This document shows, piece by piece, positions 60 through 43,490 of a stretch of DNA of 64,000 nucleotides. Position numbers and translations under genes: made by a program. The DNA comes from Octopus sinensis (taxonomy: Eukaryota): NCBI RefSeq assembly GCF_006345805.1, contig NW_021826031.1, positions 558,001 to 622,000 of the forward strand. The letters run 5' to 3'. Position 1 is the first letter of the stretch, and each line of letters begins with the position of its first letter. The notes beneath the pieces were generated by a model, which saw only the letters and a list, made by a program, of their open reading frames with translations, searched no databases and had not been told where the DNA came from.

Positions 60-890
60 TTAGTGCAAGAAGAAGAACTGATGGCGATCCTGTTTCCCCT
101 CACTATCGCTTGGGACACGTTCTGGACGAGGCATCTTGTCTCCAGAGGATTGTGTACTCAAGATCTTGAGACGTCCAATACACTTGAGGAAGCATAACGA
201 CTCCTTCCCAATCGATCCCAGGGTTTCGACAGCAACCGGCTGGAAAACGTAACGATCGGTGAGCCCATCATATTTCTTCTTCTTGATGTCCTCTGCTTTA
301 TCCGCGGCTGTGCCGGCATTGCAGGCACATTCCAACATGTTTGGACAAGGAGTCGGAACATGTTGAATCCCATACGAGAGGCTTTCCTTCCAAAAACGGA
401 AAGATGGTCATCCCGTCTGGGCGTTTTCCATCTCCTCGGTCCAAACCAGGTGGTTCCAGCACTGATGGGAATCCGATTGAATCGATAGCTCTTCTTATAA
501 CGTCGTTGAGAGCTGAATGCCTCGGGAATCTACCAGCGCTTTTTCGACAGGAAAGAGGGTGAAGTCCAAATTGATCAATCGATGCACCACAGCGGCATTT
601 GTGTGGTTCACAAACTTTGAGACCGATACGTAGACAGATACCAACTCGTAGTGTGTCAGAATCCAAGAGAGTCCCCAAGCTTCCGATCGGGAAGGCTTCC
701 AACCATTCTCCACTCCCCGTGGACCTCCCGGCAAGCAAGCATGCTCTACGGTGTTGATTCGATGTCTTTAGGAGACTCTCGAACCGACCTTCGCACACAA
801 TCTTGTCATAACTCTTCTGTAAGGACAAGTCCGACGGCAGCTTCGATTCGTTTGCGCTCCAACTGTCAAAGTAGGGAGTCGGTAAAATTA
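60..890 (-). mobile_element. CRE-like non-LTR retrotransposon, 5'-truncated fragment (CCHC knuckle + restriction-like endonuclease)
   Basis: Translation shows HKCRCGASIDQFGLHPLSC...RHSALND, GKRPDG, LVWDSTC, then after a frameshift KKKKY...FQPVAVETLG. Same architecture as the copies at 38.5-40.8 and 49.6-52.7 kb. Confidence 0.85.
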
Positions 891-1137
891 AGAATGATAT
901 TAATTTTATACTGACAAAAATTGAAGATTTGATTTTTAAAACTTGGAATTCAATTTCAACACCAAGGTATTTCAGGTTCTCCGTTACTGTAAACCCATGG
1001 AGGTTTCTCGGCGGTTCTCGTTTAGCTCCCTGTTTGCAATCCAAGTGGTGGTGCACTTTTTGCAAAAATAGTCTGGGTAATTTTTAGCAATTATTTATTT
1101 TTTGTCTATTACGTTTTATTAACCAATTAAGTAAAAA

Positions 1138-2788
1138 TTATTTTATTTTTGAGTAAAATAATAAGTAAATTCTTTTTGAATTTTGAATCTTTTTGAAGTG
1201 AACTCTTGTGAGTTGTTCGTCATTAGCGTTTATCCAGTACTTTTTCCCATTTTCCGAAAATGCCTTAATATAGGCAGTATAGTGTCCTCGTTCCATTGAC
1301 CCAGAGTGGGCAACCGCTCCTGATAATTCATATTTTGCGTCTTTGTTAGACACGCAGTATTCAGACATATCCAATTTCTTATTTATACGTACTGATTGCT
1401 TGTTCTTCACAAATTTCCCATCCATCTAATAAAATTCAAAAACCATGGTCATTACGTAACAAAATCGAATCAAATGAATCACTAGCACGTCGGGGAGAGA
1501 GACCAGTCTTGTCGAGCGGATCCCAGTTGTTTTTACTCCTAAAATACTAAAATAACACAAAAAACCTTCAAAACACTCCGAACACTCAAAGTTGTCAAGA
1601 ACTTCATTTTTTACGAATTCTGAAAGTAGAGAACTGATGCTCTCGATTTGTGAAGTTTGAATGTGACTCAGATCAATTGATTGTTCAGATGGTTCCAATT
1701 GGGTTGTAAAATACGGTGATATTTTGTCCCAAATCCCAATGAACGGCCGAGTGAGGTATTTCGCAGTGCCAACAAATGAGGAATAAGCAGATGCAGTCTT
1801 GACTGGTCTGAACCATTCGTCTGACTGTCCTCTGTTGGGTGTGGCTACGGTAGTGTCTACACTCTTATTTTTGAGTGGCAACGACAGACACGTATATTCT
1901 TCGAGCGACTCACGTGTCTAAATAAGGATGTGTTGCAATTTACATTTTTGCATTGATCGCACTGGTAACTGTTAGTTTGTATGCCTCCAAAAACGCTGTG
2001 GCAAATATCTTTTCGGATAGATTGTGTAAAGAGAAGCCAAAACTCGTGTGCGTCCTGCTGGCTGAATACATCAAAGTAAGGATATCTATGAACGTGTGAT
2101 TAAATGAATACTTCTTGTAGAAGGAAGATATTAGATCGAATGGATTGTGAACATTATTTTTCTCAATTGCTTTATTGGAACTGTCGGAAGACTCTGATTC
2201 CGTGTGATTTGTCATTTCTCGGAAAAAGGAGACAACTGAGTTAGCATATTTGTCGTCCCCTTGTTCCCAATGTTCAATGGCGTTTACAATTGCATGGATG
2301 GTAGTCATACACTACATGTAAATGACAGGACAATACTTGCATCACACTTGCGAAATAACAAGTATTCCCCAAGTTCATAATGGCCTTTTGTAGCGAATTT
2401 GGTCTCGCATAGTTAAACAATTTTATTTCGGCATTTTCAATTTCTATTTGCGTTTGTTCTGTATAAATTTTGTGATTTTTTTGATAGTCTATTTTGGTTA
2501 TTGATGACATTTTTATTGTTTTTTTAAAAATTTCTGTTTGCATTTTTTCTTTTGATTTGAATCTTGCTCGTTTTCCCATTTAGCCGTTGAAGTGATTTCA
2601 TACATATATAAAAAAATTAGGAAGGAAGCACTTTCTTTCCTTTTTCGGCTTGGGGTAAAGTTCACCAAAAAAAGGTAAAAACCCCAACAAGACTCTTCAT
2701 CTTCTCCAGAGAGTCTTGTTGGCGATCGCCCGAAGGAACATCCAGGCCATCTTATTGTCTGCTTATAATTACTGGAATTAGGCATCAA
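1138..2788 (-). CDS. Ubiquitin carboxyl-terminal hydrolase (USP/peptidase C19), multi-exon; 5' end uncertain
   Basis: Cys box IMNLGNTCYFASVMQ|C after removing a 25-nt GT-AG intron (2312-2336). QQDAHEF is restored by a 26-nt intron. LPDVLVIHLIRF, His box AVAHSGSMERGHYTAY and YLLFY precede the stop at 1138. Confidence 0.85.
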
Positions 2789-5431: not shown

Positions 5432-6306
5432 TCGATGGCTGGAGAGCTTCTTGTCAGGAAGACAATCATTTGTCCGCTGTGGAAACCGCCTATCGGGGTG
5501 TGTGGAACTTAGAAGGGGAGTCCCGCAGGGATCTATCTTGAGTCCACTTCTGTTCAACCTCTTCTTGGCGGACATTCCTCTGCCGTCGACACGTACTGGC
5601 AAGCTCGTTATCTATGCTGACGATATCCTGGTCATGGATACCTCGAAAAGGATATCGCAGTCTTGGAGACGACTGAAATCATACATTGCAACGCTAAAGA
5701 TGTGACTATAGAGAAGGGTTTGACCCAAGCACCGGAGAAGAGCACCATTTCATGGTTGCGGAGAGGGAGTCGCTATGCGGAGTCTTGTGCATATGCGATG
5801 AGTAGCTATGTGATGGATCTCTCGAAAAGAAAAAATCTTTCTTACCTGGGAGCAACCATTAACTGTCGTGGCTCGTACGTAGAGCATATAGCAAATCAGA
5901 GAAAGAGGAGTGTGAGGATCCTCAAAAGCTTAACCAGGTTCCATCTGGATCCGGAAACGTACATCTACGTATACAAAACGTGTGTGCAGCCAGTCCTCAC
6001 ATATGGCTACGAGGGCTGGTACGGTACGGAGGAGAGTGACTACCTGATCGAACAGTTGGAAAAGACAAGACGTTTCGCTATGAAATTGGCTTACGGAGTA
6101 CAACTTGACGGAAGGCTAAAAGACTCACAAGAATCCTCTGTGCCCACGATCCGGATGGTCTTGGAGAATTGTCGTCAAACATGACTAGTATTGGGGATAC
6201 GCATGGAAAGAGACACTTCGGTGCCTTGTTTTTATCTCCCCGCCGATGTTTTTCTTCCTTGTTTTTCTTTTTCTTTTTGCTCAATAAACACTATTCTATT
6301 CTATTC
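5432..6306 (+). mobile_element. 5'-truncated LINE (RT C-terminal half + tail)
   Basis: RGVPQGSILSPLLF, YADD, YLG motifs and a (CTATT)n tail. Perfect 13-bp TSD TACAAAATAACTA at 5419-5431 and 6307-6319. Confidence 0.9.
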
Positions 6307-7118: not shown

Positions 7119-7854
7119 GGGATACTTTCTTTCAACTCGTACCTTCATTCATTCAAATTTCCTTAGAAATTGACAAACTGAGATTGATGTGGAAACTCTT
7201 GGCCATAAATTCCAGCCATGACCTGACGGACCACCAATTGAATTTGGTCATGACTGCTTTCCTTCGACTTGCCTCCCCAAGTCCTGAATTCAAACTGATT
7301 TTATCAAAAATTCTATGTCTGGAAGGATGGATGATCTCCCTACTCTTTGAACTGGGCAAGTTGTGATGGACTGACTGTTATAATTTCCCAATAAACTGTT
7401 ACCTCAATAGTGTAAGACTGCAAACCACAAATTGATTAATAATTGGAAACCGATATTTGGTGTAATATTAATTGACCAATCTATTGAGACATTCGATATA
7501 ATTTCATTTTTGTCCAAAGTACATTCGAAAAAGTCAATTTCACTAAAATGTAATCAGCTTTGTGTTCTAATCCTCTGTCAAAATCGGATTTTAGTTTATT
7601 CAAATAAATATTAATAGGCCAGGATTCATGTGCCTAAACATTTTATGTTAAACAAATTCGATTCCCCGTTACATCACTCGCCTTCTCAGTTCTTCATTTT
7701 TAAGTTTGATGAATTGATCCCTGTGATCCAGGAGCAGCAACCACCAGTTCGTCCGGTAATATCCACCCTGAACGGGGACTTCTCTCCAAGTCTTTGTGAC
7801 CTAAGTAAAGAATACCACGCTCTCTACCTAAAGATAATCTTTCTTAAGGAATAA
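7119..7854 (+). CDS. Hypothetical multi-exon gene, no recognisable domain
   Basis: ATG at 7119. Short ORFs (7184-7366, 7432-7614, 7630-7854) can be partly joined by 28-nt and 24-nt GT-AG segments; one junction is unresolved. Convergent with TMX2. Confidence 0.35.
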
Positions 7855-7929
7855 AACCTAGCGTAATCACTCTGACATATATAATAAAATTAGACTAATG
7901 TAGAATGTTTATTAATCAGTTAACTTAAA

Positions 7930-8782
7930 TTAATCATTGAAAATTCGCTGCAAGTGGAAAGTCTCAATAACCATAGACTACGTAATATATACAAAACACA
8001 AACCTCGGTAATACAATTCGCCTGTCCATAGGACAAACGGTGTGCTCGAATGACTGGGATTCTGGCCTTCTCTACGCCCCCCTTAAACAAAATGACAGTC
8101 GGAAGTTGTTTAGTCCACACGGAAGTATCAATTTTATATTTTTCGGATTCCTGGGGGTTTTGGGCAACGTCGATCCTTCCAAATTTCAGATTCTCTTTGT
8201 GGAAACGATTTGACAAAGAATCCATGAGTTGTGAGAATCGCCAACAAGGCCCACACCACGAAGCGTAGAATTCGACGACCCAATAAAGGGCTGGGGACCT
8301 CATTCCCTCCACCTGTGACTTAAAGGTTATTCGATTGAGTTGGACGACTTTGGAGGTGGCACGTGGCTTGAGGGACAACACATATTTCTGGAGTAGACCA
8401 GAAAGGACACAAAAAATGACGTAGACCACAAAGTGGGGCACAGATTTAAGGAAAAATAAGCATGCTGATCCAATTCGGGAAATATTATTGAATTTGTCAA
8501 GGGAGTCATTTAAGGTACCTCCAAATAACATTTGAAAGACTTACCCTGCCTCCGTGCTCGCATAATGCCATAGACGACGGTGGCAAACAAGATTTGACAC
8601 TCCATCTAAACAGTAGGCCTGCATAGACAAACCATGTCAAAAATATCCACACTTAAAGGGCCATTAGTTAAGAGTAGTTTGAAAGGAATGTAGAAAGAGG
8701 ACACGACCACGTCGATTGTCACTGCCAAGTAATCTGCATTTTTTGACAGACGGTCGCCCCAATATTTTATGTATTGAGTCAT
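7930..8782 (-). CDS. TMX2: Thioredoxin-related transmembrane protein 2 orthologue
   Basis: WVVEFYASWCGPC...KFGRIDV...KYKIDTSVWTKQLPTVILFKGG matches the TMX2 signature. N-terminal hydrophobic segments; three introns of 27, 26 (8519-8544) and 26 nt (7978-8003). Confidence 0.9.
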
Positions 8783-12404: not shown

Positions 12405-12571
12405 GAAGAGATTAATGTAACTACAAATGCTGGTTAATAGTTAATGACATTACTTTATGTAGGCTACTAATTATCAAAAAAAGTCTTACTAATTATTCTT
12501 AATAAGTTTTATACTTTCTCTAAAATAAGAATTCAAAAATAAATTGTTTATTTATAATCAAAGAACCTCAT

Positions 12572-13630
12572 CCAGCAACAACTATACTCCGTTGAGAATT
12601 GAAAACAGTCTCGAGGCTTCGCCCTCGAAATCATCGGTCACTTTATTTTCTTCCGACAGAAGACAATCAAACCTTCACCCGAAGTTATCTCTCTTTGGTT
12701 CTGACCTCCCACTATGCAAAAACCCTACTATCCTCGGACTTACTTTTGATCCAACTATGTCCTTCAACAAGCATGTCTCTAACATTTCTGACAAAGCAAA
12801 CAGACGCAAAAACATACTAAAAGCAATAAGTGGGCACATTACTGGCGCCCAGAAGCCACTCCTCAAACGAGTTTACAAACAATACATATGCTCCGTATTA
12901 AGTTATGCGAGTCCAAGCTGGGCGCCCTGCCTATTCATAAACTCGACAATGGCATTTAAATCAGTACAAAACAAGGCCATGCGCACAATATTTGGGTGTC
13001 TGAAATCAACCCAATTGATAACCTCCACTGTGAAACAAACCTTTTGCCAATTGAAGATCATCTAAATATAAGAGGAGCGCAATTTTTATTTGCATCTCGA
13101 ATTCCCTATCATCCATGTTCTGCTCTAAACGTGCTAAACGGAAATTCTTGTTCAGTGAAGAACACGCCGTCGAATCTATATTCTCGGATCCTTGCAAAAA
13201 TCGATGGCTTGCATATGCTCATATCCGATGAGGAAAATTCACAATTTGACATCCACATCAGCTATTCTTAAGCTGACGCCTAACTCTGTACTCAATAAAC
13301 CTCCTAATGACGTTCACTGTTCTAAATTGCTTCTCAACCGTTCGGCTCAGACAAACTTGGCTCGTTTCCGTTCTGGTCATCACTCCTCATTAAACCACTA
13401 TGCACACAAAATGGACATCTCGATCTCCCCCTTTTGTCCCATTTGCCATGCTGACGAGCACAAAACCGCCCATCTATTCCGCTGTCCTGGTCTTCTTTCG
13501 CTCCGTAAAAAATTTGCAATTCACTCCCGGAAGTCCTATGGGAGCAACCTGGGAGGGCGCTGTTATTTCTGCAAGCTGCTTGTCTCATAACTTGATGTGA
13601 GATCAAGGTTATGCAACAACAGCAACAACA
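12572..13630 (+). mobile_element. 5'-truncated Ingi/Vingi-like LINE
   Basis: SPSKSSVTLF, ILGLTFD, C-terminal LARFRSGH...CPIC...HLFRCP, (CAA)n tail, 8-bp TSD AACCTCAT (12564-12571, 13631-13638). Confidence 0.85.
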
Positions 13631-13993: not shown

Positions 13994-15358
13994 TCACAAC
14001 TCAAGTGCGTCTGAAGTGTCGAGTTCATTCATCAGAGTCATTACAAAGGCGATCTCTTTGGAGGCCGACTCCATAGCCTTAAAGACCGAGTTATCCTTGC
14101 TCCGGATAATATTTGGTGCCATGATCATAGCAATTGTCTCCGCCTTCATCTTAGTCATTGCTACAGATTCCTCACTGAGAAAAACCTTCATAAACTTAGA
14201 CCTTCAAACCTGCAAAAAGTGGATCAAATGCTTCAAGGCATTCGCGTTCTCGTTAGGAAGGAGGGAAACGATTTTGAGGACGCTGGCCTTTGTGGGGATC
14301 TCATTCACACAGGCATCATAAAGGCTGCAACACACAAGAGGTTCTTCCAATTCTCGACACCACATCTTTAAAGTGGAACACAAAACCTTCAGATTAAGGC
14401 AGTTGAGGACACTAACGTGTGGATCCTTGGTCGAAGGGTCCTGGAATACTTCACATTCTCGTTTAGTCGCCATTACGTCATCCACATCTCCAGGAATACT
14501 CCAAATAAGTCAAGAAATGCTCACCGAAAAATACCTTCTACAAAGGGCGATCCACACTCGAGCATTTTAGTAGTGAGAGTAGTCAGGATCCATGGAAGTC
14601 GGAGATCGGGGAAGCGTGAATGCTGTTGTTGGAGTATCTGACTGAGCGAGGAACCAAAAGACGACTTTTCGTAAATAAATTTCTGTGGTGACTAGCCAAA
14701 AGGACCAACCCGAACATGGCGAATGTGCTCGGCGGTAACCTGAGAACACACCGTGGTCACTCTGTGGACCCTGGCTTTGGCTATTAAAAGAAGAATGTAG
14801 TCAATAATTTGAGTAAGTTTGGGACATTTTTCATTAGTGTGAAACCGACAAAGCGCGGCAATGTCGTCCAAAAGTGATGGCTGGGGTGCGACATAAGTCA
14901 AATAAATAGCCAACAGCTCCCATCCTTGAATCTCCTTTTCACTACCACCACATGACATAAACATATACATGTTGTCCCGTCCAGACAACTGCATGCAGAT
15001 GAGCACAAACATATCCTGTCGTTGATCAATATTGTATAATCCGATGGAAACTAAATCGGATATGACCACATCCCTGCTCTCTGCACACTTTTTGTCGTTC
15101 ATTATCATTTTCACATGTAAAAGTTAGAATTAGTGAAATATATTTTTAAATGCTCGAGCCAGTAGTTTCAGGTTCTTGTTCTGACCTTTAAAAAAGGACC
15201 TCGGAAATTTCTTAATTTAAATGGAAAGAATACCTTTGACCAATTCAGGTATGGAAAGTAGTCAAGTCTCTTTATACTCTATAGCCGTAATATATCGAGC
15301 GGATAACCTGGCAAAACATCGAGGTAATTGCTAAATCTAAATAATTTATATGAATCAT
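13994..15358 (-). CDS. ARHGAP39: ARHGAP39/Vilse-like MyTH4 + RhoGAP protein (no WW region seen)
   Basis: GWELLAIYL (MyTH4), LPWILTTL, EGIFR (Arg finger intact), DPH|VLCSTLKMWCRELEEPL, FLQ|VF...TKM...IAMIMAPN...ELDTS match ARHGAP39. Several 23-30 nt introns; start tentative. Confidence 0.9.
15117..15143 (-). other. Candidate 27-nt AT-AC intron in ARHGAP39
   Basis: Minus strand ATATATTTCACTAATTCTAACTTTTAC. Contains an in-frame stop and no GT or AG; removal gives ...ARAFK-N-VKMIMND, collinear with ...LFKLIQMYMGD. Confidence 0.55.
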
Positions 15359-21889: not shown

Positions 21890-22015
21890 CTAGTTAGATT
21901 GAAATGAATGTGTGGGTATCTGCACTGTTGGTGCTCCTGCAATGACGGGGCATGTTAAAGGCTATGTTTCTGTTGCGAAAAATAAGAATCCGGACTTAAT
22001 TCACACTTTTTGTTT
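21890..22015 (+). mobile_element. hAT transposase fragment
   Basis: CVGICTVGAPAMTGHVKGYVSVAKNKNPDLIHTFCF resembles the Buster-type TDGAPAM...HC motif. Confidence 0.5.
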
Positions 22016-22609
22016 CAAGAACTTTCTTTGTATCCCTCGACTGACCTATTTGCTTCGCTCTTCTCCATGTTGTCGTTTACATCAAGAAATTCTGGCTTTG
22101 GATAACGCTGTTACGTTGTCGTTGCAATTTCTTCTGAACATCTTGTTTACTAAGGTGGGACGTTCTCGTGCTGTGCTCCCGATTCGTTTTGGAGGTATCG
22201 GGGTTTGTTCTTGTGCTGGCCGATTTCCGTGCCATGCTATACTGAGTATGACTACATTCCCATTCAGGAGAGTTAGGTCTCTTGTTTGGGACGTGACCTG
22301 CGTGGATTCCCTGTCGGAGACATTGTTGTCCAGGACAGCATTTTCGTCCGACTATGCTTTCGCGCTTGCGGAGGAAAAGAAATGTTGAAATACGCTCACC
22401 TTTCGAAGGACAATGAGTTCGTGCCCCTCGTCTTTGAGACCATTGGCATGGTCGGCAAAGAGGCTGAGAAGTTGTTAAGACTGTTGGACAAAAAAATCGC
22501 ATCAAAGACCAATGACCGGAGGGAGACGAGCTGGCTCTTTCAGCACGTCTCGGTCTTAATTTTTCACGGGAACGGTTTTTCGATTTGCAGCGCGTCTTCG
22601 CTGGACTGA
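22016..22609 (+). mobile_element. CRE-like retrotransposon fragment (internally deleted)
   Basis: PRLTYLLRSSPC, LPIRFGGIG, LVWDVTCVD, FVPLVFETIG, RETSWLFQ. Confidence 0.8.
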
Positions 22610-24098
22610 TTGTCAAGTCTGCGTCACTATAGCTAGTTCCTTTCCTTTATTGATCATATGTTTTATAAATGAAAAAAGAAAGGAAGTGTAAATAAATTAT
22701 TCTACTAATTATTGATCATTTGGAGTCATTATTTATAGGTTTGAAGAATTATTTTCCATCCTATCAGCTGAACTCTAGATTTATGTTCTGGCAGCGTGGC
22801 GTTATGTGGTTCACCAACTCGCTTGAATCTCGCAATTCAGATTTGGAAACGCTTAGGGGGTACCTAATGCCCACTGGAAAAGAACCATCAAAACTTGTCC
22901 CCCTGGTGACATTTTCGTCCCAGGACGATGCACCCTACCTAAGTCTCACTCTCACTCTGAAAGGGGGCGGTCTTCTCACTCTAATCAGAAACAACGTGAA
23001 TTTCTCTGACATCTCCGCTGAAGTGAGGAAGATCATCGAGGCTGATGAGGTTTCCGAGTTAATTGGGATCTCGCTTGGCACATCGAAGGGTCGTTTATTG
23101 CTCGTCAATATGTACATCCCACCTCCTGGCTCTTGTCCAAGGAGCTATTGCCTCCCTACTCTCTCCAATCTGGCACGTGTAGACGGGGTCATCTTATGCG
23201 GTGACCTCAATGCGAAACACCCCCTTTGGCTCTGTAATCAGTTGGCGGATACGAGAGGGAAATCTCTACTTTCCCAATTGGATTCCTTAACTATCCTGAA
23301 CGACCCATCGAGAAACACAAGAACCTCATTCAGAGGGACCGACAAACCTCCGTCACCCGATGTAACTTTATGCTCTCCTTCTCTCGCATCATCTACGGAG
23401 TGGTCAGTCCTCTATGAAACGAGAAGCGATCACAACCCGATAACGGTGAAGATCAAAAGAAAAGTTGTCACCAGGAAAGTACAAAGCGGCCAACTGGCCT
23501 TTGTTCAAGAGATATTGAACACGAGACTAAAAAATTGCAATCTGTGCAGCCTTAGCTCTCTCGACAAGGCCATTGGGTTCTTCTCGAAGATCATTCTGAA
23601 AGCAAGTGCAATGGCTATTCCTAAACGTCCACCTCACTCTGCTTGTAGTCGAAGGATATCCGGTCTGGCCAAGGAGAGAAATCGCCTCAAGAAGTCAAAC
23701 TGAATGTCTTCCGACATAATTACCCGCATCAGATATTTGAACAAGGAATTGAAGACCAGTGATCACAGGCACACCTATCTGAAATGGAATCGCATTCTTA
23801 CTACCATGAAACGTAATCGTTCAACGGGTGAAGTGTGGAAAGCCATTCTGCACGTGGCCAGGGGGGACGCCCCTGAACCTTTCGAAGATTTCGATAAAAA
23901 AGACGTGAACAACTTCATGAATTTCTATGCGAAAAATGCACACAAGGAGCACAGGAAATCCGATTCACTCCCCTCCAACAGAAGCCTAAAAAACGGGCTG
24001 AACCTCTCCTTCTCTCGGTAAAGGAGATGGAAGATACCTTGCACTCTACAAAATCATCGTATTCTCACGGCCCGGACAAAATCCCGGTCATCCTATTA

Positions 24099-25369
24099 TG
24101 TCGCGAGCGCAGCGCGCGACCGAGCGCTAGACGCGACTTTGACAGCTAACAAGCCTGTCATCAACAAATATATTTATTAAATAAATTATGAAGCATTTAG
24201 ATTTTTTCTCATTATTCTAAAATATCAATTCTGCTTTGCCCAACTGGAAACGCAAATCTCGAGGGCCCTTACACACAAGATGGGGATGACAGCTGTTTGT
24301 CTGGACATTTCAAAGGCGTTCGACAGCGTTTGGTACCTAGGCCTCCTGGAAAGGATCATCAGTATCCATCCGGGGCAAAGGACTGTCAAATGGCTAGAGA
24401 ATTTCTTACACATGCGAAAGTCTTTTATCAGATGTGGTAACCGGACCTCGGATACAATCAATCTAAGGAGGGGAGTGCCTCAAGGGTCGGTCCTGAGCCC
24501 TCTACTTTTCAACTTATACGTTGCCGACATCCCGAAACCAGTAAATCCGGAGAGTCTACTAATCATCTATGCGGACGACATATTGGTTACGGATCTGTCG
24601 CGATCCAAGGACCTCTCTTGGAAAAGGCTGAGGAATATATAGCGAGGGTTGAGTCTTGGGCTACGGAGAAAGCCCTCTCCTTAGCACGAGACAAGTCCAC
24701 CATCACGTGGGTTTCTAAAACTCGGAAAGGAAGAGAACCACTTCTGGAGACAATGGACTAAGAATCTCTGACGACCTACGCTACCTTGGGGTAACGATCG
24801 GGGCTGACGGATCGTTCCTTAAGTTCGTGAAATCTAGAAGAAGGAAATGTTCCGGGATCCTGAGAAGCCTTATACGCTTCCATCTCTCCCCAGACACCTT
24901 TCTCTTCATCTATAAGGCGACTTTAGAACCAGTCCTTATCTATGGACATGAAGGTTGGTACCCTACAGACGAGAGAATCGCACAATCACCAAACTGGAGA
25001 AAACAAGGCGCTTGCGATTAAACTGGCGTATAAGCTACGGCTTGATCAGGATCTCCCCAGAGAGCTAGACGAACAAACTCAAAACATTCGGCAAGTCCTC
25101 TGCTCATTGCAAAGGGCATGAGAAGTGAAAAGGAAAGCAAGGAGGAGGCTTTCGGTGTCTCGATTTTAATAAAACCTTTTCATATAACTCTCCTCTTTCG
25201 GCTGCTAAGTCAATAAAATCTGTTCGTTCGTTCGCCCGTGTATTTGCTTTGGCAGCAGTCTCGTCCTATCACCGACCTTAATTCCCGTGTATTTGTCAAT
25301 TTATAGATTTGTTGATTTATCGGATCTAGAAATTGAGTGGTCGCTTGCTGCGCTTGGTCGCTCGCGACA
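24099..25369. mobile_element. Unclassified non-autonomous TIR element, copy B
   Basis: Same TIR as copy A; 5-bp TSD TATTA (24094-24098, 25370-25374). Removing it plus one TSD restores the host LINE frame. Confidence 0.85.
24239..25244 (+). mobile_element. 5'-truncated LINE RT fragment nested in TIR copy B (related to 5432-6306)
   Basis: AVCLDISKAFD, RGVPQGSVLSPLLF, YADD; (TTCG)n tail; possible TSD TGCTTTG. Ends approximate. Confidence 0.75.
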
Positions 25370-26699
25370 TATTAAAAAACCTTGGTGTCGAAGGAGTCAG
25401 GTTCCTAACATCTATTTTCAACTATTCAATCAGCAACAATGTGATTTCGTCAATATGGAAACGAAGCCTGGAAGACCAAGAGGGGACCCGTCATCTTTCA
25501 GGCCGATTTCCCTGTTATGTTCGATGTCAAAAATCCTGGAAAGACTGGTTCTTGGCAGAATAGAAGATTTCTTACCCGAAAGACATTTTCAACATGGGTT
25601 TAAGGAGGCGAAGTCCACGTCTTCGTACCTTCAATCCTGTCAAACTTCATCTGTACCGGTTTTGCCAGCAAACCGAGGCACCAAAAGACCGTGCTCTGCT
25701 CCGTCGACATCCATAAAGCCTTCGACTCCGTCTTGAGAAAGCTCCTCTCAAGGAAGATATTCCAATCCGATTTTCCTCTGAAGCTAAAAATATGGATTAC
25801 CAACTTTCTAAGTGGACGAAGGGGAAGGGTGTGCCTCGGTGGTCTGAAGTCCAAATCTCGTCTTCTACCCAACGGATCCCCCTTATCCCCGGAAACCTAT
25901 TTTTGGAAGACCTCCCTCCCTCGACAACAATGACATTGTTCTCTCATACGCGGACGACATCGTACTAGCCTCACGGGACCGGGACATCCAGAAGGCCTCT
26001 GAAAGGCTTCAAGCTAACTTGGATCGGCTGAACCTATGGCTGACGGACAAGCGGCTCGTGGTAAACGCGGCAAAGTCCGCCACGTCCCTCTTCACTTCGG
26101 ACAAAAGATTGGGAAGGACTTCAGTCGACTTAAAGCTGAATAATATGTCCGTACGCTTCTACAGGAGTCAGACGGTCCTAGGGATACCCTAGACATGCAC
26201 CTCTGTTTCTCCCCACATGCAGACACCTCCTTCGCAATTGCGAAAAAAAAGTTGAACATCCTACGAACTCTATCCGGAATATGGAAAAACGGGTCGCACC
26301 CGGTACTGGCGAATACTACCGCCAGTACTTCGAACCTTGTATTGCCTACGCCTGCAGATCATGGGGTCCGCGGTTATCGTGGTCCAACAGGAGGCGAATC
26401 GAGGAGGCCCAACAAAGGGCCCTCAGATTAACCGATCGTTGGTCGCATGATAGCCAACGCCCGGTCCAGCTTCTCTAGAAGACCTCATCAAGATGAACCT
26501 GGGCCCGTCAGCGAATGCTCCGCCAAAAACGGTCTGCCGCCCGGTGCGATTTTGTGTGGGCTCGTGGAAAGATCACCGAGCGAAGATGAGGTCCCTGGTT
26601 GAGTGCATCGAGATCACGTGACGTTTGTTCGGTTTTTAGCGTGGTCTTGGTGATTTAATAAATAAATAAAACTCTATGATTGGGTGACTACGAAATAAC

Positions 26700-26990
26700 T
26701 AGAAACGAGTTTTTATTCAAAGGAGGAAGAAGAACTTGCTTTTATATCAAGTGACAGAACATTAAAAATGAAATATTTAAAGCGTAATATTGATTCGTCC
26801 TGGCTGATTATAAAAAAGAATATCCTATTATAACAAACCACGCTTTAAGAGTTTTAGTTCACTTTCTAACGACTTATCTCTATGAAAGTGGAAATATAGA
26901 GCATAAGAATGCGCTAACTTACTATACGTAGAACGAGACGTGCGTTTATCCTTTTAAAAGCTAGGCCGAATATTACAGACCTATGCAAGA
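26700..26990 (+). mobile_element. hAT dimerisation-domain remnant
   Basis: WLIIKKEYPIITNHALRVLVHFLTTYLYESG matches the hAT C-terminal W...EYP...A...F.TTY.CESG pattern. Confidence 0.5.
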
Positions 26991-27053
26991 GACATCAGCC
27001 TAACCATCTCACTAATTTTTGTATTAATAAACACTGATAATTATTAAAAACTA

Positions 27054-29123
27054 TTTATTTATTTATTTATTTACCCCCGGCCCCTTCAATTGAAGGAAGC
27101 CGGTGGCTAACAAGAACGTTAGGGCCAATGTCGGACGCTCCCAAAGATCCCCGATCGTGATCCGGTGTTCCGAGGAAGTAGAAGGCGGGCCTGGACAGGA
27201 GAAAAGGTCGTTGAGGGAATAGGAAGGGGTTATTTCACCAAGACCGATTTTTATGCGATAATCGTGTAGGCCAGTATGGTGGCCACAGCGGAGACGAGCC
27301 AAGTTCACTCGGGCTTCTCTTGAGAGGGAGGATTCGATCTTATTATTGGCGGCGGAAGGCGTCCCAGAAGCTTGTTTATTCCAAGACATCTGATTGCCCT
27401 CGTAGCCACCAGGTCGTGAATCCCCTTCTGGTTAATGTCCGGAGGGGATCGTATAAGCTTGCGGACTTTGTCCGCGAGGGTCGGAACTATTCTCCTGTTG
27501 TTAGTGGAGTGCCAGAGGAAGTAGCCAGGGTGATTTAGGGTTCGGCATTTGTCAAGAATTGCAGCCCGAGCATTTCAAAATGGTCACTGATTGGAAGGAT
27601 TTTCGATTCCCAATGTAGGTGGTCGGTAGGTGTCGTTTTTAGACAGCCGGTAATAATTCGTAATGCTGAGTTTTGAGTTCTCTGAAGTTTTTCAAGGTTT
27701 GTATTAGATAAGCAGGAACCCCAAGCAGGGATGGCGTAGTTCATAGTTGTTCTAATAAACTGCTTGTATACAGTTGTTAGACTTTCCTTATCCTGCCCAA
27801 ATGAAGTCCCCGCAATAGCTCGGAGCACATTGAGTTTTTTCTGGGATTTTCCACAGATATATGAAACATGTTTCGAGAAGGACAAACAGCAATCAAATAT
27901 CAGACCCAAGATTTTGGGGGATTTTTCAACTGGGAGTGGAGTGTTGTCTAGGAATAGTTTAGGCTCTAAGTTGAACTGACGGCGGTCAGTTGTGAATAGC
28001 GTAACAGATGATTTGGAAGGAGAAGGTTGAAGAAGATTGCATTTCAGCCAGGACGAAAGAGTGTTCATGTGTTCCTGCAGAAATCCAGAAGCGGTGATTA
28101 TGTTTTGGTGGCGGGAGGCAAAAATTAAGTCATCAGCGTAGGAGAGAAGTAGAGTATTATTGTTCGTCGGGATATTTGACAGATGTAAGTTAAATAAGGC
28201 AGGTGAAAGGACCGAGCCTTGGGGAACTCCGTTAGGCAAGTATTTGTAGCGTGAGTAAGAAGACATGATTGTGGTGCGACCAAGACGCCCAGAGAGAAAA
28301 GAGAGTAGCCATGACTTTATTTGGTGGGGGAATTCCGTATCGGTTATTTTCCTACACAGAACGTGTCTTGACGTTCTGTCAAATGCCTTTTCAATGTCGA
28401 TGGATGCAATAATTGTTCTTTGAGGTGGCTTATGATTGTTAAACCATCCGCAATGAATTGTGTCAGTTTTGAAAGATGGGTGGAAGTGGAATGCAAAGAC
28501 GAAAGCCATGTTGAGATTCAGCAAGTGGGAGGAAAGGTTTTATGATGCTCAATACAACTCGCTCTGTTATTTTTGAAACCACTGAGATCAAAGAGATAGG
28601 TCGAAAAGAGGAGGGGTCAGAGGTATCACGATTTGGCTTTGGGATAGGGATGATGGTAGATTTCTTCCAAAGCATAGGAACCAGACCATGGTTGATCGAG
28701 TATTCGATTAAATTGGTCAGAGCCAGAAAGCCATTAGGACCCAGATTTTTTAGGTGGTGGATGGCAAGGCCATCAGGACCTCTGGCGTTAGAATTCCGCG
28801 AGTTAACAACAAGTTGCCTGGTAAATGATTCTGGGATGTTAATATAGTCAGTAGAATTGTCATTTGACTTATAATGTGATTTTCTTACGAAACGGAGATC
28901 CTTTGGGGTAGGAAGGTGACTGATTTTTGCATAATGGCGAATTAAGATGTTGGCTTGATCCTGGAAAGATAGGACAGATTTTTTGGTCGAGATACCGGTG
29001 GCATGTGAGAGGGGACATGTTTGCCTCGTGTGAATTTTCTTGAGGGTTCTCCAGAAAGCACGGGATCCAGTATTTGGGGTTATTGAAGTGATAAAATCAT
29101 TCCATTCGTCAGTTTTTTCAGTT
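27054..29123 (-). mobile_element. 5'-truncated Ingi/Vingi-like LINE, near-identical to 44.7-46.76 kb
   Basis: RT ORF 27535-28524 (KAFD, GVPQGSVLSPALF, YADD), SREARVNLARLRCGHH, (TAAA)n tail, 13-bp TSD TTATTAAAAACTA (27041-27053, 29124-29136). Confidence 0.9.
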
Positions 29124-29270: not shown

Positions 29271-32200
29271 CTAATATTTCTTATTTGCGGATCGACTAAT
29301 ACGTAGACTACATATGCTACTTTATTGTTTTTAGTCGGTTTATTTCCTTGGATAGGTTTTGATTTTCCTCCTCAAGTTCGTCTTTTTCCGACTGAATCTT
29401 CCTTAGCTTATTCTTAAAACTATCCACAGTATCTTCGAGTTCTTCGCAGTTTTTTTTAAGGGTTTTGTTCCGTGATATGAATGTGTCATTCTAGACTTTA
29501 TCTGTGCCAGAAAACCTCGGACTTTGACCTGTTCAGATCTTCTTGCATTGTGTCTGCCAAAATAACGGACTCCTTTAACTTCTTGTTCGTTAATTTAAGT
29601 TTTTTCTCCGCTTCCCGTCGTTGCCTTGGAATAAGGAAGCTATTCAGTTTACCTTATTTCCTGTTCAAGTTCAGTCTCCATTGATGCCATTTTTCGCATT
29701 TTAGACTCCAAAGAATCTTTGTAACCCTTGACTTTTGTCAGTTCTTCTTGAATGGACATGAGTTGTTCAGTCAATTCTTTATTTTTCTTTTCGTTATCCG
29801 AATTTTGTGTCTTGTATTTTTCACAATTTGCTTTCTCCGCGGAGATTTGGTTACTGTACTGGTCTTTCTAGAAACAGTAATTGGGAAGTGGATATACAAG
29901 AATATTTGATTTACGCAATTCGTCTTCTAATTCTTCGTGATTAACTTTTTCTTCGTCCAATTCTTCTGCTAGGTTGTGATTGATTCTTTTCAGTTGAGAG
30001 ATCTCAGATTGGGTTTGGGATAATTTTCCTTGTAGGGTTTCAAGTTCTTGATTTATTTCGTCTTTTTCAGAGGACATGTTTTTCTCACTTTGCTCCAAAT
30101 TAGTGACCCGCGAGGTCATTTCTGCAACTGATTGTAACGCAGAGTTCAGTTTTGATTGAAGTTGACTGCATGATTCATTCAAAGAACTTTCGTTACTCTT
30201 GGCATTTTCCAAATCTTTTTGCATTTCTTTGCACAAATTCTAATCGTTAAATTCAAAAAGAGAACATTCTGCTTTTTGTTTTGTTTGGTCAAATTTTCAA
30301 CAGTTGATTTTAATTCGTCCATTCTGCTTACAAATTCTTGCGATTCAATCTCCAATTTCTTTTTAGAGGCTAAAGCGGAAGCTTTGGCTCGACTCTCAGA
30401 CTGGAGCTCCTGCTGCGTTTCTTCCATCTGTGAAACACATTATCTATATGAACACCTTCTTGTTGATAGATCGTAGTTTATTTTCCATTTCCTCGGACAT
30501 TTCGTTAATTTTTCTAGAATAGTCGGTTCTTTCTGCCTGAAATGCCACCTCCTTCCGATTCAGTTCATTTTGAGTAGTAAATAATTCGTCCTGAAGTTCT
30601 TCATGATGAGAAGATATTTCCTCGTTTTTCTTCTTCAAGTCCCGTAGTTGTGCTTTCATGTTCACGTTCTAAACATAAATAGTCAAGGAAGACATCTGCC
30701 GCCTCCCCCGAGACAGTCGATTTCACATCCGCTAATTCCTTTGAAGTAGCGATCTGCCTTTTTGTCATCTCTTCAAGTTCGTTGTTCTTTTCGTCGCATG
30801 CTCGCGTCAACGAGAGACATTTGCTTTCAAGGTTTCTTAAATTTTGTTCAAATGTATCCCGCTCTTTTGTGAGGCTTGAAAATTGTACAATTTGAAACAA
30901 ACTTTGTGTTTAGTGTCTTCACTTCGGACATGGCGGAGTCATATTTTTTTTGTTTTTTTGTAAGATTCGACATTTCGAGTTCAAGGGCTTCAATTTGGGA
31001 ATTTGAGTCCGCCAACTTTCAAACTAATCACAAAAATAAACCTCATTTTGATACACCGTGCTTGCTTTTTCGATTTTGTGCTTGGCAGCCGAAATAATAT
31101 CAAGTTCAGTCCTAACTGATTCTATTTCTTTTTGAAGTTTTTTTGTAATTTCTTCTATCCGCTCTTTTTCTTCGGTCAAAACAGAAACGTTACTGACGGC
31201 ATCGTTGTACTGAAATGTGTTTGGAGGAATACTTTCGATTGAAGTGACATTATCTGTTTCCCTTTGGCCTCAGAATTCAATGCCTCTTCTTCGATGTGTT
31301 CGTTCAGTTCGTCGATAATGGCCTCCATTTTGTTCACTTGACTGTTCGCTTTGGACAGTGAATTCTTCTCGTCCTCGAGTTTGGACTTGATTTCTTCCAA
31401 TTGGGAAGATGACTGTTTTAATTGTCGTTCAAGTTCGGTGTTTTTCTTTTCTGCGTCGTCTAACGCTTCGCTTATCCTTGATATTTCGGACTAAAAATAG
31501 TTCCCACTCATAATACCGCGTCCTTGGATTTCTGTTTAGACATGTCCGACTTGATTTTTTCTAGATCGGTTGCTTTTTGACCCAGTTCCATGATTTGCTG
31601 TTCAAGTTGTTTCCGTTTTTTATCAGCGTCTTGCTTGTTTTTGTTTAAACTGTCAACTTCTGCGGCCAATTCTTCTTTTTCAGTTTCAGTCACTTTAAGT
31701 TTTTTCATAAAATTGTTTTCACTCTAAACATAGTAGAATTTCTCGACCTTCTGAACTGATTCAACTTGATCGGTAAGACGACTGATTTCATCCACGGCCT
31801 TTTCTTAGCGATTCGCATGGCATCTTCATTTTCCGCACTGAGCTCTTCCATTTGTTTTTGGAGTAAATTTATTTTGGTATCTTTTTCTTTCATCAAGTTC
31901 CTCTCGGCTTGACTCAAATCCGCAGCCTCCTCTTCTTGAAGTCTCATTCCTTCCAATTCCTTGAAATCATTTATATTTCAAACGTTCATGAGAAAGTGTT
32001 TGGACTTTTCAAGGTTTTTTCGGGTTTCTATTTCCCCTTCAAGCTCCTCCTTTAACTCCTCCAGAGTAAATTTCAACTCACGGTTTTCCTTCATTGACTT
32101 TTCCTTTAGCATACTTTCTTCGTCCGCCCTATTAAATCATAAAAAACTATAGACTTTGCTGTTAAAAAGCTCAGTTGCTCATTGTTGGCCAAAATTTTCT

Positions 32201-43417: not shown

Positions 43418-43490
43418 ACTTTTTTGACTTTAATAACTTTTTTACTTTGTCGGTATAGTCTTAACACCATTAAGACGTTAAGAATTCAAA

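What the first reader, a model, noticed from the sequence alone, without database searches (positions are those of the whole stretch)
15117..15143. Candidate 27-nt AT-AC intron with a TTCTAAC branch-like motif
Seen: the upstream exon (YLNWSK|KFPRSFFKGQNKNLKLLARAFK) and the downstream exon (VKMIMND) are in one frame, separated by a stop-containing stretch with no GT or AG. Removing ATATAT...TTCTAACTTTTAC restores MyTH4 spacing. Known: AT-AC ends with a CTAAC-type branch point typify U12 introns (donor ATATCCTT; here ATATATTT). Inference: an exceptionally small minor-type or converted AT-AC intron.
Basis: partly seen in the sequence, partly recalled or inferred. Interest (0 to 1): 0.72.

Follow-up and report, generated by a model that had tools for sequence, protein, structure and literature searches.

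The report
Tiny AT-AC intron, relic of U12-type
A 27-base stretch that interrupts an ARHGAP39-like gene is very probably a real intron with rare AT-AC ends, sitting exactly where an oyster and a priapulid worm carry a classical ~1-kb "minor spliceosome" intron, so it shows what becomes of such an intron in an animal whose introns have shrunk to about 26 bases.

Summary
On the minus strand, 15143-15117 (ATATATTTCACTAATTCTAACTTTTAC) lies between two coding exons of an ARHGAP39/RhoGAP93B-like gene. It carries two in-frame TAA codons and no usable GT or AG. All 26 aligned homologues lack these 9 codons, and the flanks align without gaps. Every in-frame GT/GC-AG alternative scores at least 24 bits worse against a homologue profile.

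The new result is orthology. Priapulus caudatus and Saccostrea echinata ARHGAP39 have textbook U12-type AT-AC introns (ATATCCTTT/C ... TTTCTTGAC or TTTCCTTAAC, 9-11 nt, AC) in the same codon and phase: phase 1, the codon after F-K. The window's intron is therefore a miniaturised descendant of an ancestral minor-type intron.

Its U12 signals have decayed. The donor is ATATATTT (C+5 and C+6 lost), and its U12 branch-site match is no better than in neighbouring GT-AG introns. Its length (27, the local mode) and AT content match 22 verified GT-AG introns of 23-33 nt.

Most likely it is now removed by the major spliceosome as a U2-type AT-AC intron. Continued U12 dependence is not excluded. No transcript data were reachable. 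The source looks like a dicyemid, but this is not proven.

The parts
15117..15143 (-). Candidate 27-nt AT-AC intron ATATATTTCACTAATTCTAACTTTTAC; phase 1, splitting codon a|at (Asn) that follows Phe-Lys
   Evidence: Sequence. It is a 9-codon insertion relative to 26 homologues. Profile gain from removal is about 10 bits. It has the same codon and phase as the U12 AT-AC introns of Priapulus and Saccostrea.
15124..15132 (-). Two in-frame TAA stop codons (15132-15130 and 15126-15124) inside the intron
   Evidence: Translation of the minus strand
15123..15129 (-). TTCTAAC, a U2-type branch-site-like motif (6/7 of UACUAAC); the putative branch A lies 7 nt from the 3' end
15129..15137 (-). TTCACTAAT: the best match in the intron to the U12 branch consensus TTCCTTRAC (6/9). 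Its A lies 13 nt from the 3' end. It also contains CACTAAT, a second yUnAy-type motif
   Evidence: The 6/9 match is no better than in 10 of the 22 GT-AG introns scored there, so it is a possible vestige only.
15144..15210 (-). Exon B (67 nt): KFPRSFFKGQNKNLKLLARAFK plus the first base of the Asn codon. It is the counterpart of the small exon bounded by a U2 intron and a U12 intron in Priapulus and oyster
   Evidence: (shuffled B reaches the observed score in 2/200)
15211..15233 (-). Intron 1, GT-AG, 23 nt, phase 0 after ...LNWSK. The position is shared with Priapulus, Saccostrea, Ischnura, Hypsibius and the fungus Endogone
15234..15278 (-). Exon A (SIKRLDYFPYLNWSK); the 5' limit was not determined
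   Evidence: (shuffled A reaches the observed score in 1/200)
14969..15116 (-). Exon C1: (at)VKMIMNDKKCAESRDVV...QLSGRDN(i)
14942..14968 (-). Intron 3, GT-AG, 27 nt, in frame and without a stop; seen only as a 9-residue insertion relative to homologues
14683..14709 (-). Intron 4, GT-AG, 27 nt
14499..14524 (-). Intron 5, GT-AG, 26 nt, phase 2 in the Arg of GIFR. The position is shared with U2-type introns of Priapulus and Saccostrea
14387..14416 (-). Intron 6, GT-AG, 30 nt (probable). It is in frame and stop-free, and no intron lies here in the two orthologues checked
   Evidence: 129.3 bits, against 126.6 unspliced and 124.9 for a 21-nt alternative
14186..14209 (-). Intron 7, GT-AG, 24 nt, after ...HFLQ
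13994..14185 (-). Last exon of the ARHGAP39-like gene, ending in TGA. The model from 15278 to 13994 encodes 366 aa with a weak MyTH4 match and a full RhoGAP domain
   Evidence: RhoGAP 87.3 bits, E 1.2e-24; MyTH4 26.5 bits against a cut-off of 27; 2044 homologues

Best explanation
Bases 15143-15117 (minus strand) are a genuine spliceosomal intron of an ARHGAP39/RhoGAP93B-like gene. It is cut at A(+1)T...AC(-1), joining ...AFK-a to at-VKM... and restoring an uninterrupted MyTH4-RhoGAP protein.

It descends from an ancestral U12-type (minor-spliceosome) AT-AC intron that still exists, about 1 kb long and with textbook signals, in the same codon and phase in a priapulid and an oyster.

In this lineage all introns have shrunk to about 23-33 nt and splice signals are minimal. 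The intron kept its AT-AC ends but lost the U12 donor (ATATCCTT became ATATATTT) and the U12 branch site. It now has the length, AT-richness and yUnAy-type motifs of the neighbouring major-type introns.

The most likely mechanism is excision by the major (U2-dependent) spliceosome as a 'type II' AT-AC intron. In that case the A-C pair of terminal bases substitutes for the usual G-G pair.

What is shown: the insertion, the stops, the lack of canonical sites, the orthology of position and phase, and the decay of the U12 motifs. What is inferred: that it is spliced at all, and by which spliceosome.
For: Intron reality:
- It is a 9-codon insertion relative to all 26 homologues, with gap-free flanks.
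- The profile score is 59.3 bits spliced, 49.1 unspliced and 33.9 for exon skipping.
- All 33 in-frame GT/GC-AG alternatives score 34.8 bits or less and are 66-252 nt long, far outside the local intron size.
- The rest of the gene is intact: RhoGAP 87.3 bits, full length.

AT-AC ends and U12 ancestry:
- Priapulus L002: aaa c|ATATCCTTTACC...TTTCTTGACTGCCGCGCAC|ta att cag.
- Saccostrea L004: aaa c|ATATCCTTCTT...TTTCCTTAACATATTCAC|tg atc caa.
- Both are phase 1 in the codon after F-K, exactly as in the window.
- The chance of AT..AC at that fixed offset is about 0.004.
- The upstream WSK| intron is also shared, so the small exon is orthologous.

Major-type character:
- 22 GT-AG introns (16 in the myosin II head checked against human myosin-10; 6 in this gene) have mean length 26.6 nt, mode 27, range 23-33, and 69.5% AT.
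- The candidate is 27 nt and 81% AT, against 56% AT in the exons.
- The donor has mismatches at +5 and +6, the most conserved U12 positions.
- Its U12 branch-site match of 6/9 is equalled or exceeded by 10 of the 22 GT-AG introns scored, whereas TTCTAAC matches 6/7 of the U2-type UACUAAC.
- The A of TTCTAAC lies 7 nt from the 3' end, against the U12 optimum of 11-13 nt (PMC3584512).

Literature:
- A rare direct pathway from AT-AC U12 to AT-AC U2 has been described (PMC2831892).
- Weak 5' splice sites may ease conversion from minor to major type (PMC10639083).
- Dicyemid introns have the weakest known 5' boundary signal (PMC2483917; PMC13644364).
Against: - No transcript evidence could be obtained. 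The organism is absent from the protein and contig collections.
- U2-type AT-AC introns described so far have G at +5 (PMC2831892), and this one has A. Only 6 of the 22 local GT-AG introns have G+5, so that rule may not apply here.
- TTCACTAAT (6/9 of the U12 branch consensus) places an A 13 nt from the 3' end, within the U12 optimum. Retained minor-type recognition with co-evolved snRNAs therefore cannot be excluded.
- The presence or absence of U11, U12, U4atac and U6atac in this genome is unknown. Rfam found nothing in the window, which is uninformative.
- AT-AC, TA-CA and AT-AT excisions give the same mRNA.
Confidence: 0.6

Rival explanations
1. It is still a minor-spliceosome (U12-dependent) intron, miniaturised to 27 nt. 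It would be recognised through a lineage-specific, degenerate donor (ATATATTT) and the branch site TTCACTAAT, 13 nt from the 3' end, by co-evolved U11, U6atac and U12 snRNAs.
For: - It is orthologous to bona fide U12 AT-AC introns and retains the AT-AC termini.
- 6 of 9 donor positions are retained, including ATAT and TT at +7 and +8.
- A 6/9 branch-site match has its A 13 nt from the 3' end, within the U12 optimum of 11-13 nt (PMC3584512).
- Direct conversion from AT-AC U12 to AT-AC U2 is considered rare (PMC2831892).
- Minor intron length scales with major intron length across species, and surveys excluded introns under 30 bp, so such introns would have been missed (PMC10639083).
Against: - C+5 and C+6, the core of the U12 donor, are lost.
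- The branch-site match is no better than in ordinary GT-AG introns of the window.
- The shortest minor introns on record have a median of 39 bp, in Blastocystis (PMC10639083).
- Fast-evolving animal lineages have repeatedly lost the minor spliceosome. If the source is a myxozoan, the loss is already reported (PMC10639083).
- No minor snRNA was seen, but only 64 kb were searched.
Confidence: 0.22
2. The 27 nt are not removed. Either the gene is a pseudogene, or its product starts downstream at the ATG codons of VK-M-I-M-ND, and the upstream 'exons' are decaying remnants.
For: - There are two in-frame stops and no canonical splice sites.
- An ORF of 140 aa starts just downstream, at 15114.
- Exon B alone is not detectable by a 24-column profile against the six-frame background.
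- There is no transcript evidence.
Against: - Exons A and B are open and in phase. Each adds significant profile score: +6 and about +10 bits, with shuffles reaching the observed score in 1/200 and 2/200.
- The upstream GT-AG intron is intact and at the ancestral position.
- The insertion has exactly the modal intron length and intron-like composition.
- Its AT-AC ends fall on the ancestral U12 site (p about 0.004 by chance).
- The remaining 330 codons and six introns are intact.
Confidence: 0.1
3. The segment is removed with other boundaries or by another process. Examples are non-canonical TT-TG excision at the position used by amphioxus and tick, DNA-level elimination in somatic nuclei, or an assembly artefact.
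For: - Several 27-nt offsets give equal or marginally better profile scores: AA-TA 60.4 and TT-TG 60.2, against AT-AC 59.4.
- A 2-nt AT repeat flanks the segment.
- Amphioxus and tick have an intron 8 nt downstream.
- From my own knowledge, not tested here: developmental DNA elimination has been described in dicyemids.
Against: - None of the other offsets has a dinucleotide pair known to be spliced.
- The score differences of 1 bit or less are noise.
- The amphioxus and tick intron is a normal GT-AG at a different phase.
- A 2-nt repeat is expected by chance in roughly one case in ten in AT-rich DNA.
- An artefact would not reproduce the position, phase and termini of an orthologous intron.
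Confidence: 0.05

Closest known systems
U12-type AT-AC intron of ARHGAP39 orthologues (Priapulus caudatus XP_014668112 locus; Saccostrea echinata XP_061181101 locus)
   Same: The gene, codon and phase are the same (phase 1 after F-K), and so are the AT-AC termini. The donor begins ATAT and has TT at +7 and +8. The same small upstream exon is bounded by the same WSK| U2 intron.
   Different: The orthologues are 1,073 and 1,013 nt long. They have perfect or near-perfect ATATCCTT(T/C), and TTTCTTGAC or TTTCCTTAAC placed 9-11 nt from the AC. The window's intron is 27 nt, lacks C+5 and C+6, and has no distinctive U12 branch site.
U2-dependent 'type II' AT-AC introns (human SCN4A/SCN5A; 15 found in human, 0.008% of introns; PMC1557818, PMC2831892)
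   Same: Both have AT-AC termini on an otherwise major-type intron. Both are thought to derive from U12 AT-AC introns and to be 'trapped', because switching to GT-AG needs two simultaneous changes.
   Different: The known cases have G at +5 and a good U1 match, and they are of ordinary length. This one has A at +5, in a genome whose 5' splice sites are essentially GT(A/T) only, and it is 27 nt long.
Vestigial U12-like introns in lineages that lost the minor spliceosome (C. elegans, PMC1557818), and minor-to-major conversion in Helobdella (PMC10639083)
   Same: These are former minor introns that survive at ancestral positions with decayed U12 motifs in fast-evolving animals.
   Different: Those reported are GT-AG. 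All 87 converted introns in PMC2831892 had GT-AG ends. Here the AT-AC ends are kept.
Ultra-short introns of dicyemids and myxobolid myxozoans (PMC2483917, PMC6736024, PMC13644364)
   Same: Length is about 22-27 nt and AT content about 70%. The 5' signal is reduced to GT(a) and there is no clear branch or polypyrimidine signal. The window's 22 GT-AG introns have mean 26.6 nt and 69.5% AT, against 24.9 +/- 2.5 nt and 69.9% AT for Dicyema acuticephalum.
   Different: None of the papers I read on these lineages mentions AT-AC or U12-derived introns.
Shortest documented minor introns (Blastocystis, median 39 bp, mostly AT-AC; PMC10639083)
   Same: They are short and of the AT-AC subtype.
   Different: They retain recognisable U12 motifs and are at least 30 bp by the survey's cut-off. 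The candidate is 27 nt with decayed motifs.

Membership tests
U12-type (minor spliceosome) AT-AC intron | AT at the 5' end and AC at the 3' end | tested here: met
   ATATAT...TTTTAC at 15143-15117. TA-CA and AT-AT give the same mRNA.
U12-type (minor spliceosome) AT-AC intron | Highly conserved donor /ATATCCTT | tested here: not met
   ATATATTT: mismatches at +5 and +6. The match is 6/9 to ATATCCTTT, against 9/9 in Priapulus and 8/9 in Saccostrea.
U12-type (minor spliceosome) AT-AC intron | Branch site TTCCTTRAC-like | tested here: not met
   The best match is 6/9 (TTCACTAAT). It is equalled or exceeded by 10 of the 22 GT-AG introns scored. TTCTAAC is U2-like.
U12-type (minor spliceosome) AT-AC intron | Branch A 10-20 nt (optimum 11-13) from the 3' splice site | tested here: inconclusive
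   The distance is 7 nt for TTCTAAC and 13 nt for TTCACTAAT (PMC3584512).
U12-type (minor spliceosome) AT-AC intron | Orthologous position shared with accepted U12 introns | tested here: met
   The codon and phase are the same as in Priapulus and Saccostrea. The intron is absent in Hypsibius, Ischnura and Endogone.
U12-type (minor spliceosome) AT-AC intron | Genome encodes U11, U12, U4atac and U6atac and the minor-specific proteins; excision depends on them | not testable with these tools
   Only 64 kb are available. Rfam finds no snRNA in the window. The organism is not in the searchable collections.
U2-type (type II) AT-AC intron | AT-AC termini on an intron that otherwise matches the host's major-type introns in length, composition and 5' positions | tested here: met
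   It is 27 nt, the local mode. AT content is 81%, against 69.5 +/- 8.9% for the 22 GT-AG introns. A at +3 occurs in 10 of those 22.
U2-type (type II) AT-AC intron | G at +5 supporting U1/U6 recognition, as in SCN4A/SCN5A | tested here: not met
   A is at +5. Only 6 of the 22 local GT-AG introns have G+5, so the feature may not be required here (PMC2831892).
U2-type (type II) AT-AC intron | yUnAy / UACUAAC-like branch site | tested here: met
   TTCTAAC (6/7) and CACTAAT (5/7).
U2-type (type II) AT-AC intron | Splicing requires U1, U2, U4 and U6 and not the minor snRNAs | not testable with these tools
   This needs experiments or at least whole-genome snRNA content.
ARHGAP39 / Vilse (RhoGAP93B) gene family | C-terminal RhoGAP domain | tested here: met
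   PF00620 scores 87.3 bits, E 1.2e-24, covering 1-147 of 148.
ARHGAP39 / Vilse (RhoGAP93B) gene family | MyTH4 domain directly upstream of RhoGAP | tested here: inconclusive
   PF00784 scores 26.5 bits against a cut-off of 27. However, single-stretch alignments over residues about 5-373 to ARHGAP39 proteins reach E down to 6.5e-48.
ARHGAP39 / Vilse (RhoGAP93B) gene family | N-terminal WW domains | not tested
   The 5' part of the gene (upstream of 15278) was not modelled.
Dicyemid genome (source organism) | Introns of about 25 nt and about 70% AT; GC about 37%; about half of the genome repeats rich in LINE ORF2 | tested here: inconclusive
   Intron statistics match (against PMC2483917). Window GC is about 0.29-0.49 per 2 kb. 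There are many RT/EN ORFs (PMC6736024). Myxobolid myxozoans share the short introns (PMC13644364). No sequence identity test was possible.

The most novel reading that the evidence does not exclude
The intron is still removed by a minor spliceosome. That would make it a functional 27-nt U12-dependent intron, shorter than any on record and below the 30-bp floor of published surveys. Its altered donor (ATATATTT) and branch site would imply co-evolved U11, U6atac and U12 snRNAs in an animal with ultra-short introns.
Probability: 0.2. Interest if true: 0.8.

Novelty: new member of a known kind. Interest (0 to 1): 0.55.

Why it matters
How minor (U12-type) introns disappear is an open question. Conversions studied so far almost always pass through GT-AG, and direct AT-AC U12 to AT-AC U2 conversion is known from only a handful of vertebrate sodium-channel introns.

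Here one locus shows an ancestral, textbook U12 AT-AC intron (in oyster and priapulid) and its descendant. The descendant is squeezed to 27 nt, keeps its AT-AC ends, and has lost its U12 signals, in a genome whose major-type splice signals are the weakest known.

This gives a concrete test case for two ideas. One is that relaxed 5' splice-site requirements let minor introns be taken over without changing their termini. The other is that no one yet knows how short an AT-AC intron of either class can be.

It also flags a practical point. Surveys that discard introns under 30 bp or non-GT-AG introns will miss such relics. Gene models (as in the oyster RefSeq entry) can be wrong at U12 sites.

Tried and rejected
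1. Word-indexed protein search with the spliced MyTH4-RhoGAP fragment found nothing. The exhaustive HMMER search was needed.
2. Pfam cannot test the spacing claim. Its MyTH4 model starts about 20 residues downstream of the junction.
3. A 24-column profile of exon B alone did not pick exon B out of the six-frame background. Only the longer regional profile with shuffling controls showed its contribution.
4. A minimal-intron dynamic-programming stitcher over the myosin gene merged or mis-chose introns. I replaced it with manual, homology-checked introns.
5. My first guess for intron 6 (21 nt, gttttg...aaag) was wrong. A 30-nt GT-AG intron fits the homologues better.
6. TTTCTTGAC in intron 5 looked like a second U12 relic. 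The orthologous introns are ordinary GT-AG, so I treat it as chance.
7. RTATCCTT occurs 9 times in the window against 5.2 expected, which is not significant. The one I looked at (2078-2085) lies inside an ORF.
8. Rfam and tRNA scans of the window found nothing.
9. Junction and exon sequences are absent from the metagenome contigs, so that test was uninformative.
10. The literature search found no paper on ARHGAP39 minor introns or on minor splicing in dicyemids.
11. Five orthologue look-ups returned no usable DNA: P0004, P0009, P0012 and P0014 were not on record, and the Lymnaea gene was too long.
12. A reassigned genetic code (TAA = Gln, as in some ciliates) was considered and rejected. The genes are metazoan, the 9 codons are absent from all homologues, and the gene ends at an ordinary stop codon (TGA).
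Full report
**What is in the sequence**

The finding lies on the minus strand. It reads ...ctg gct cga gca ttt aaa a|ATATATTTCACTAATTCTAACTTTTAC|at gtg aaa atg ata atg aac gac.... The 27 bases are window 15143-15117. They contain two in-frame TAA codons (15132-15130 and 15126-15124). The minus strand has no G from 15152 to 15115. No GT donor or AG acceptor is therefore available inside or next to the stop-containing stretch.

Upstream, ...YLNWSK is followed by a 23-nt GT-AG intron (15233-15211). Then comes a 67-nt exon encoding KFPRSFFKGQNKNLKLLARAFK (15210-15144).

**The gene**

The reading frames belong to a MyTH4-RhoGAP protein. An exhaustive HMMER search with my spliced model found 2044 homologues. 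The best are single-stretch alignments over residues about 5-373, with E-values down to 6.5e-48. Their sources name them ARHGAP39 or RhoGAP93B, from amphioxus, tardigrade, horseshoe crab, oyster, bee, sea urchin, snail, priapulid, damselfly, tick, nematodes, a sponge, a choanoflagellate and a fungus.

The refined 366-residue model (15278-13994, seven introns) gives Pfam RhoGAP 87.3 bits (E 1.2e-24, full length). MyTH4 scores 26.5 bits, just under the cut-off of 27. The junction lies in the conserved N-terminal extension of MyTH4, upstream of the Pfam core. Pfam itself therefore cannot test the spacing claim.

**Is the 27-nt stretch extra?**

Yes. In a MAFFT alignment with 26 homologues, the nine codons are an insertion relative to every sequence. 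The flanks align without a gap: ARAFKN|VKMIMNDKK against E(L/I)FKL|IQ.YMGDRK (repeated more cleanly).

I also scored variants against a profile built from 80 homologues:

| Model | Score (bits) |
|---|---|
| Spliced | 59.3 |
| Unspliced (stops as X) | 49.1 |
| Downstream exon alone | 44.1 |
| Exon-skipping isoform | 33.9 |

Shuffling exon B reached the observed score in 2 of 200 trials, and shuffling exon A in 1 of 200. The upstream exons are thus homologous coding sequence, in phase with the downstream exon.

All 33 in-frame GT-AG or GC-AG introns (up to 260 nt) that could bridge the stops score 34.8 bits or less. They are 66-252 nt long.

Among non-canonical excisions, the 27-nt ones score best. 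Several offsets lie within 1 bit of each other. AT-AC, TA-CA and AT-AT give the same mRNA because of an AT repeat at both edges. Homology fixes the length but not the exact boundaries.

**The local intron population**

I spliced the head of the neighbouring non-muscle myosin II gene by hand (16 introns). I then checked the product against solved structures. It aligns to human myosin-10 over residues 23-782 at E 3.9e-298, with no gap at any junction.

With six GT-AG introns of the ARHGAP39-like gene, this gives 22 verified introns:
- All are GT-AG.
- Length is 23-33 nt, mean 26.6, mode 27.
- AT content is 69.5 +/- 8.9%, against 56% in the exons.
- +3 is A or T in 20 of 22.
- G at +5 occurs in only 6 of 22.

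Some introns are in frame and stop-free. They show up only as insertions relative to homologues, for example 14968-14942 and 14416-14387.

The candidate is 27 nt and 81% AT. Apart from its terminal dinucleotides it is a typical member of this population. A GT-AG-only path exists through the rest of the myosin gene. In the two genes examined, no other intron needs non-canonical ends.

**Orthologous introns: the decisive result**

I fetched genomic loci of seven homologues and mapped exon boundaries by tblastn plus inspection of the DNA.

| Species (locus) | At the candidate's site |
|---|---|
| Priapulus caudatus (L002) | U12-type AT-AC intron, 1,073 nt (25793-26865) |
| Saccostrea echinata (L004) | U12-type AT-AC intron, 1,013 nt (54212-55224) |
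| Hypsibius (tardigrade) | No intron |
| Ischnura (damselfly) | No intron |
| Endogone (fungus) | No intron |
| Branchiostoma (amphioxus) | No intron here; GT-AG, phase 0, 8 nt downstream after FKLIQ |
| Ornithodoros (tick) | No intron here; GT-AG, phase 0, 8 nt downstream after FKLIQ |

- In Priapulus the exon ends ...gag atc ttt aaa c. The intron is ATATCCTTTACCGTG...GCTACGTTTCTTGACTGCCGCGCAC, followed by ta att cag atg tat atg.
- In Saccostrea the exon ends ...gaa gtc ttc aaa c. The intron is ATATCCTTCTTATTG...TTTCCTTAACATATTCAC, followed by tg atc caa ata tat atg.
- Both are textbook U12-type AT-AC introns. The donor is ATATCCTT, the branch site is TTTCTTGAC or TTTCCTTAAC, and the branch A lies 9-11 nt from the terminal AC.
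- Both split the codon after F-K after its first base. The window's AT-AC boundaries do exactly the same (aaa a|AT...AC|at).
- The upstream phase-0 intron after W-S-K is also shared by the window, Priapulus, Saccostrea, Ischnura, Hypsibius and even Endogone.
- The chance that a fixed offset shows AT and AC is about 0.004.
- Position, phase, termini and the first four donor bases all agree. The candidate is the orthologue of an ancestral minor-type intron.

**Which spliceosome now?**

The U12 signals have decayed:
- The donor ATATATTT has lost C+5 and C+6.
- The best match to the U12 branch consensus TTCCTTRAC is 6/9 (TTCACTAAT). That is equalled or exceeded by 10 of the 22 GT-AG introns scored.
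Its A lies only 7 nt from the 3' end. The U12 optimum is 11-13 nt (PMC3584512).
- The A of TTCACTAAT does lie 13 nt from the end, so a vestigial U12 branch site cannot be ruled out.

The literature fits a takeover by the major spliceosome:
- U2-dependent AT-AC introns exist: 15 in human (PMC1557818).
- A rare direct pathway from AT-AC U12 to AT-AC U2 has been proposed. Its products are then 'trapped', because switching to GT-AG needs two simultaneous changes (PMC2831892).
- Weak 5' splice sites may lower the barrier to conversion (PMC10639083).
- Dicyemid introns have the weakest 5' boundary signal known and no branch signature (PMC2483917).
- Ultra-short introns of dicyemids and myxobolids keep only GT(a)...AG (PMC13644364).
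- The shortest minor introns recorded have a median of 39 bp, and surveys excluded introns under 30 bp (PMC10639083).

My estimates:

| Hypothesis | Probability |
|---|---|
| U2-dependent AT-AC relic | about 0.6 |
| Still U12-dependent | about 0.2 |
| Not spliced, or pseudogene | about 0.1 |
| Other boundaries or processes | about 0.05 |

**Source organism**

Neither the ARHGAP39-like protein nor the myosin has a near-identical hit. The best are 39% and 60% identity. The organism is therefore not in the collections, and no transcripts could be found. The junction and exon probes also found nothing in metagenome contigs.

The genes are metazoan. Intron length and AT content match Dicyema acuticephalum: 24.9 +/- 2.5 nt and 69.9% AT (PMC2483917). 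The window is packed with LINE RT/EN fragments, as described for D. japonicum: GC 36.7%, 49% repeats, LINE ORF2 expansions (PMC6736024).

Myxobolid myxozoans share such short introns (PMC13644364) and are reported to have lost the minor spliceosome (PMC10639083). I regard a dicyemid as most likely, but this is unproven.

**Verdict**

The correction is that the CTAAC-type motif argues for, not against, major-type recognition.

The feature is a new member of a known, rare kind: an AT-AC intron of U12 ancestry. It is notable for its size and for the clean orthology to textbook U12 introns.

Noticed in passing
L004 54140-54211 and 55225 onward (Saccostrea echinata ARHGAP39 locus): The RefSeq protein models (XP_061181101 and XP_061181121) read ...ACEVYSLIQ... 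. The genomic U12 signals (aaa c|ATATCCTTC ... TTTCCTTAACATATTCAC|tg atc) give ...ACEVFKLIQ... instead. The annotation pipeline seems to have mis-placed the boundaries of a U12 AT-AC intron by a few bases.
   Followed up: partly
L001 2575-2600 and 8170-8190 (Branchiostoma belcheri); L006 about 7480-7500 and 8195-8210 (Ornithodoros turicata): Amphioxus and a tick both lack the WSK| intron and the U12 intron. Both instead have a GT-AG phase-0 intron 8 nt downstream (after FKLIQ). This near-intron pair is shared by a chordate and a chelicerate. It could reflect an ancient 8-nt micro-exon, parallel gain, or loss plus gain.
   Followed up: partly
window 29500-35973, minus strand: This is a non-muscle myosin II heavy-chain gene. 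Its 16 head introns are all GT-AG and 23-33 nt. Several are in frame and stop-free (35643-35611, 33 nt; 33786-33757, 30 nt; 33595-33572, 24 nt), so they read through as false extra residues in a naive ORF. About 13 more tail introns were predicted only by a crude stitcher.
   Followed up: partly
window 14499-14524, minus strand: The GT-AG intron GTGAGCATTTCTTGACTTATTTGGAG contains TTTCTTGAC. This is 8/9 of the U12 branch consensus, is identical to the Priapulus branch site, and lies 11 nt from the 3' end. Its donor is not U12-like, and the orthologous introns in Priapulus and oyster are ordinary GT-AG. I treat it as coincidence.
   Followed up: yes
window 14387-14416, minus strand: This is a probable 30-nt in-frame, stop-free GT-AG intron inside the RhoGAP domain (DPH|VLCSTLK). 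It has no counterpart in the Priapulus or oyster genes. It may be a lineage-specific intron gain, or it may be real extra residues. The profile evidence is modest (+2.7 bits).
   Followed up: partly
window 298-1065, 5663-6184, 12544-13590, 21912-28524, 38495-40383, 44055-46702 and elsewhere: There is a dense cover of LINE-like reverse-transcriptase and endonuclease ORF fragments on both strands. Some are near-duplicates of each other (for example 27535-28524 and 45331-46320). There are also ISXO2-like transposase ORFs (42988-43458, 60660-61136) and a hAT-like ORF pair (61843-62923).
   Followed up: no
window 7920-8531 and 1426-2308, minus strand: Further probable host genes were not modelled. 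One is a thioredoxin-domain membrane protein (WCGPC motif). The other is a ubiquitin-hydrolase-like ORF pair.
   Followed up: no
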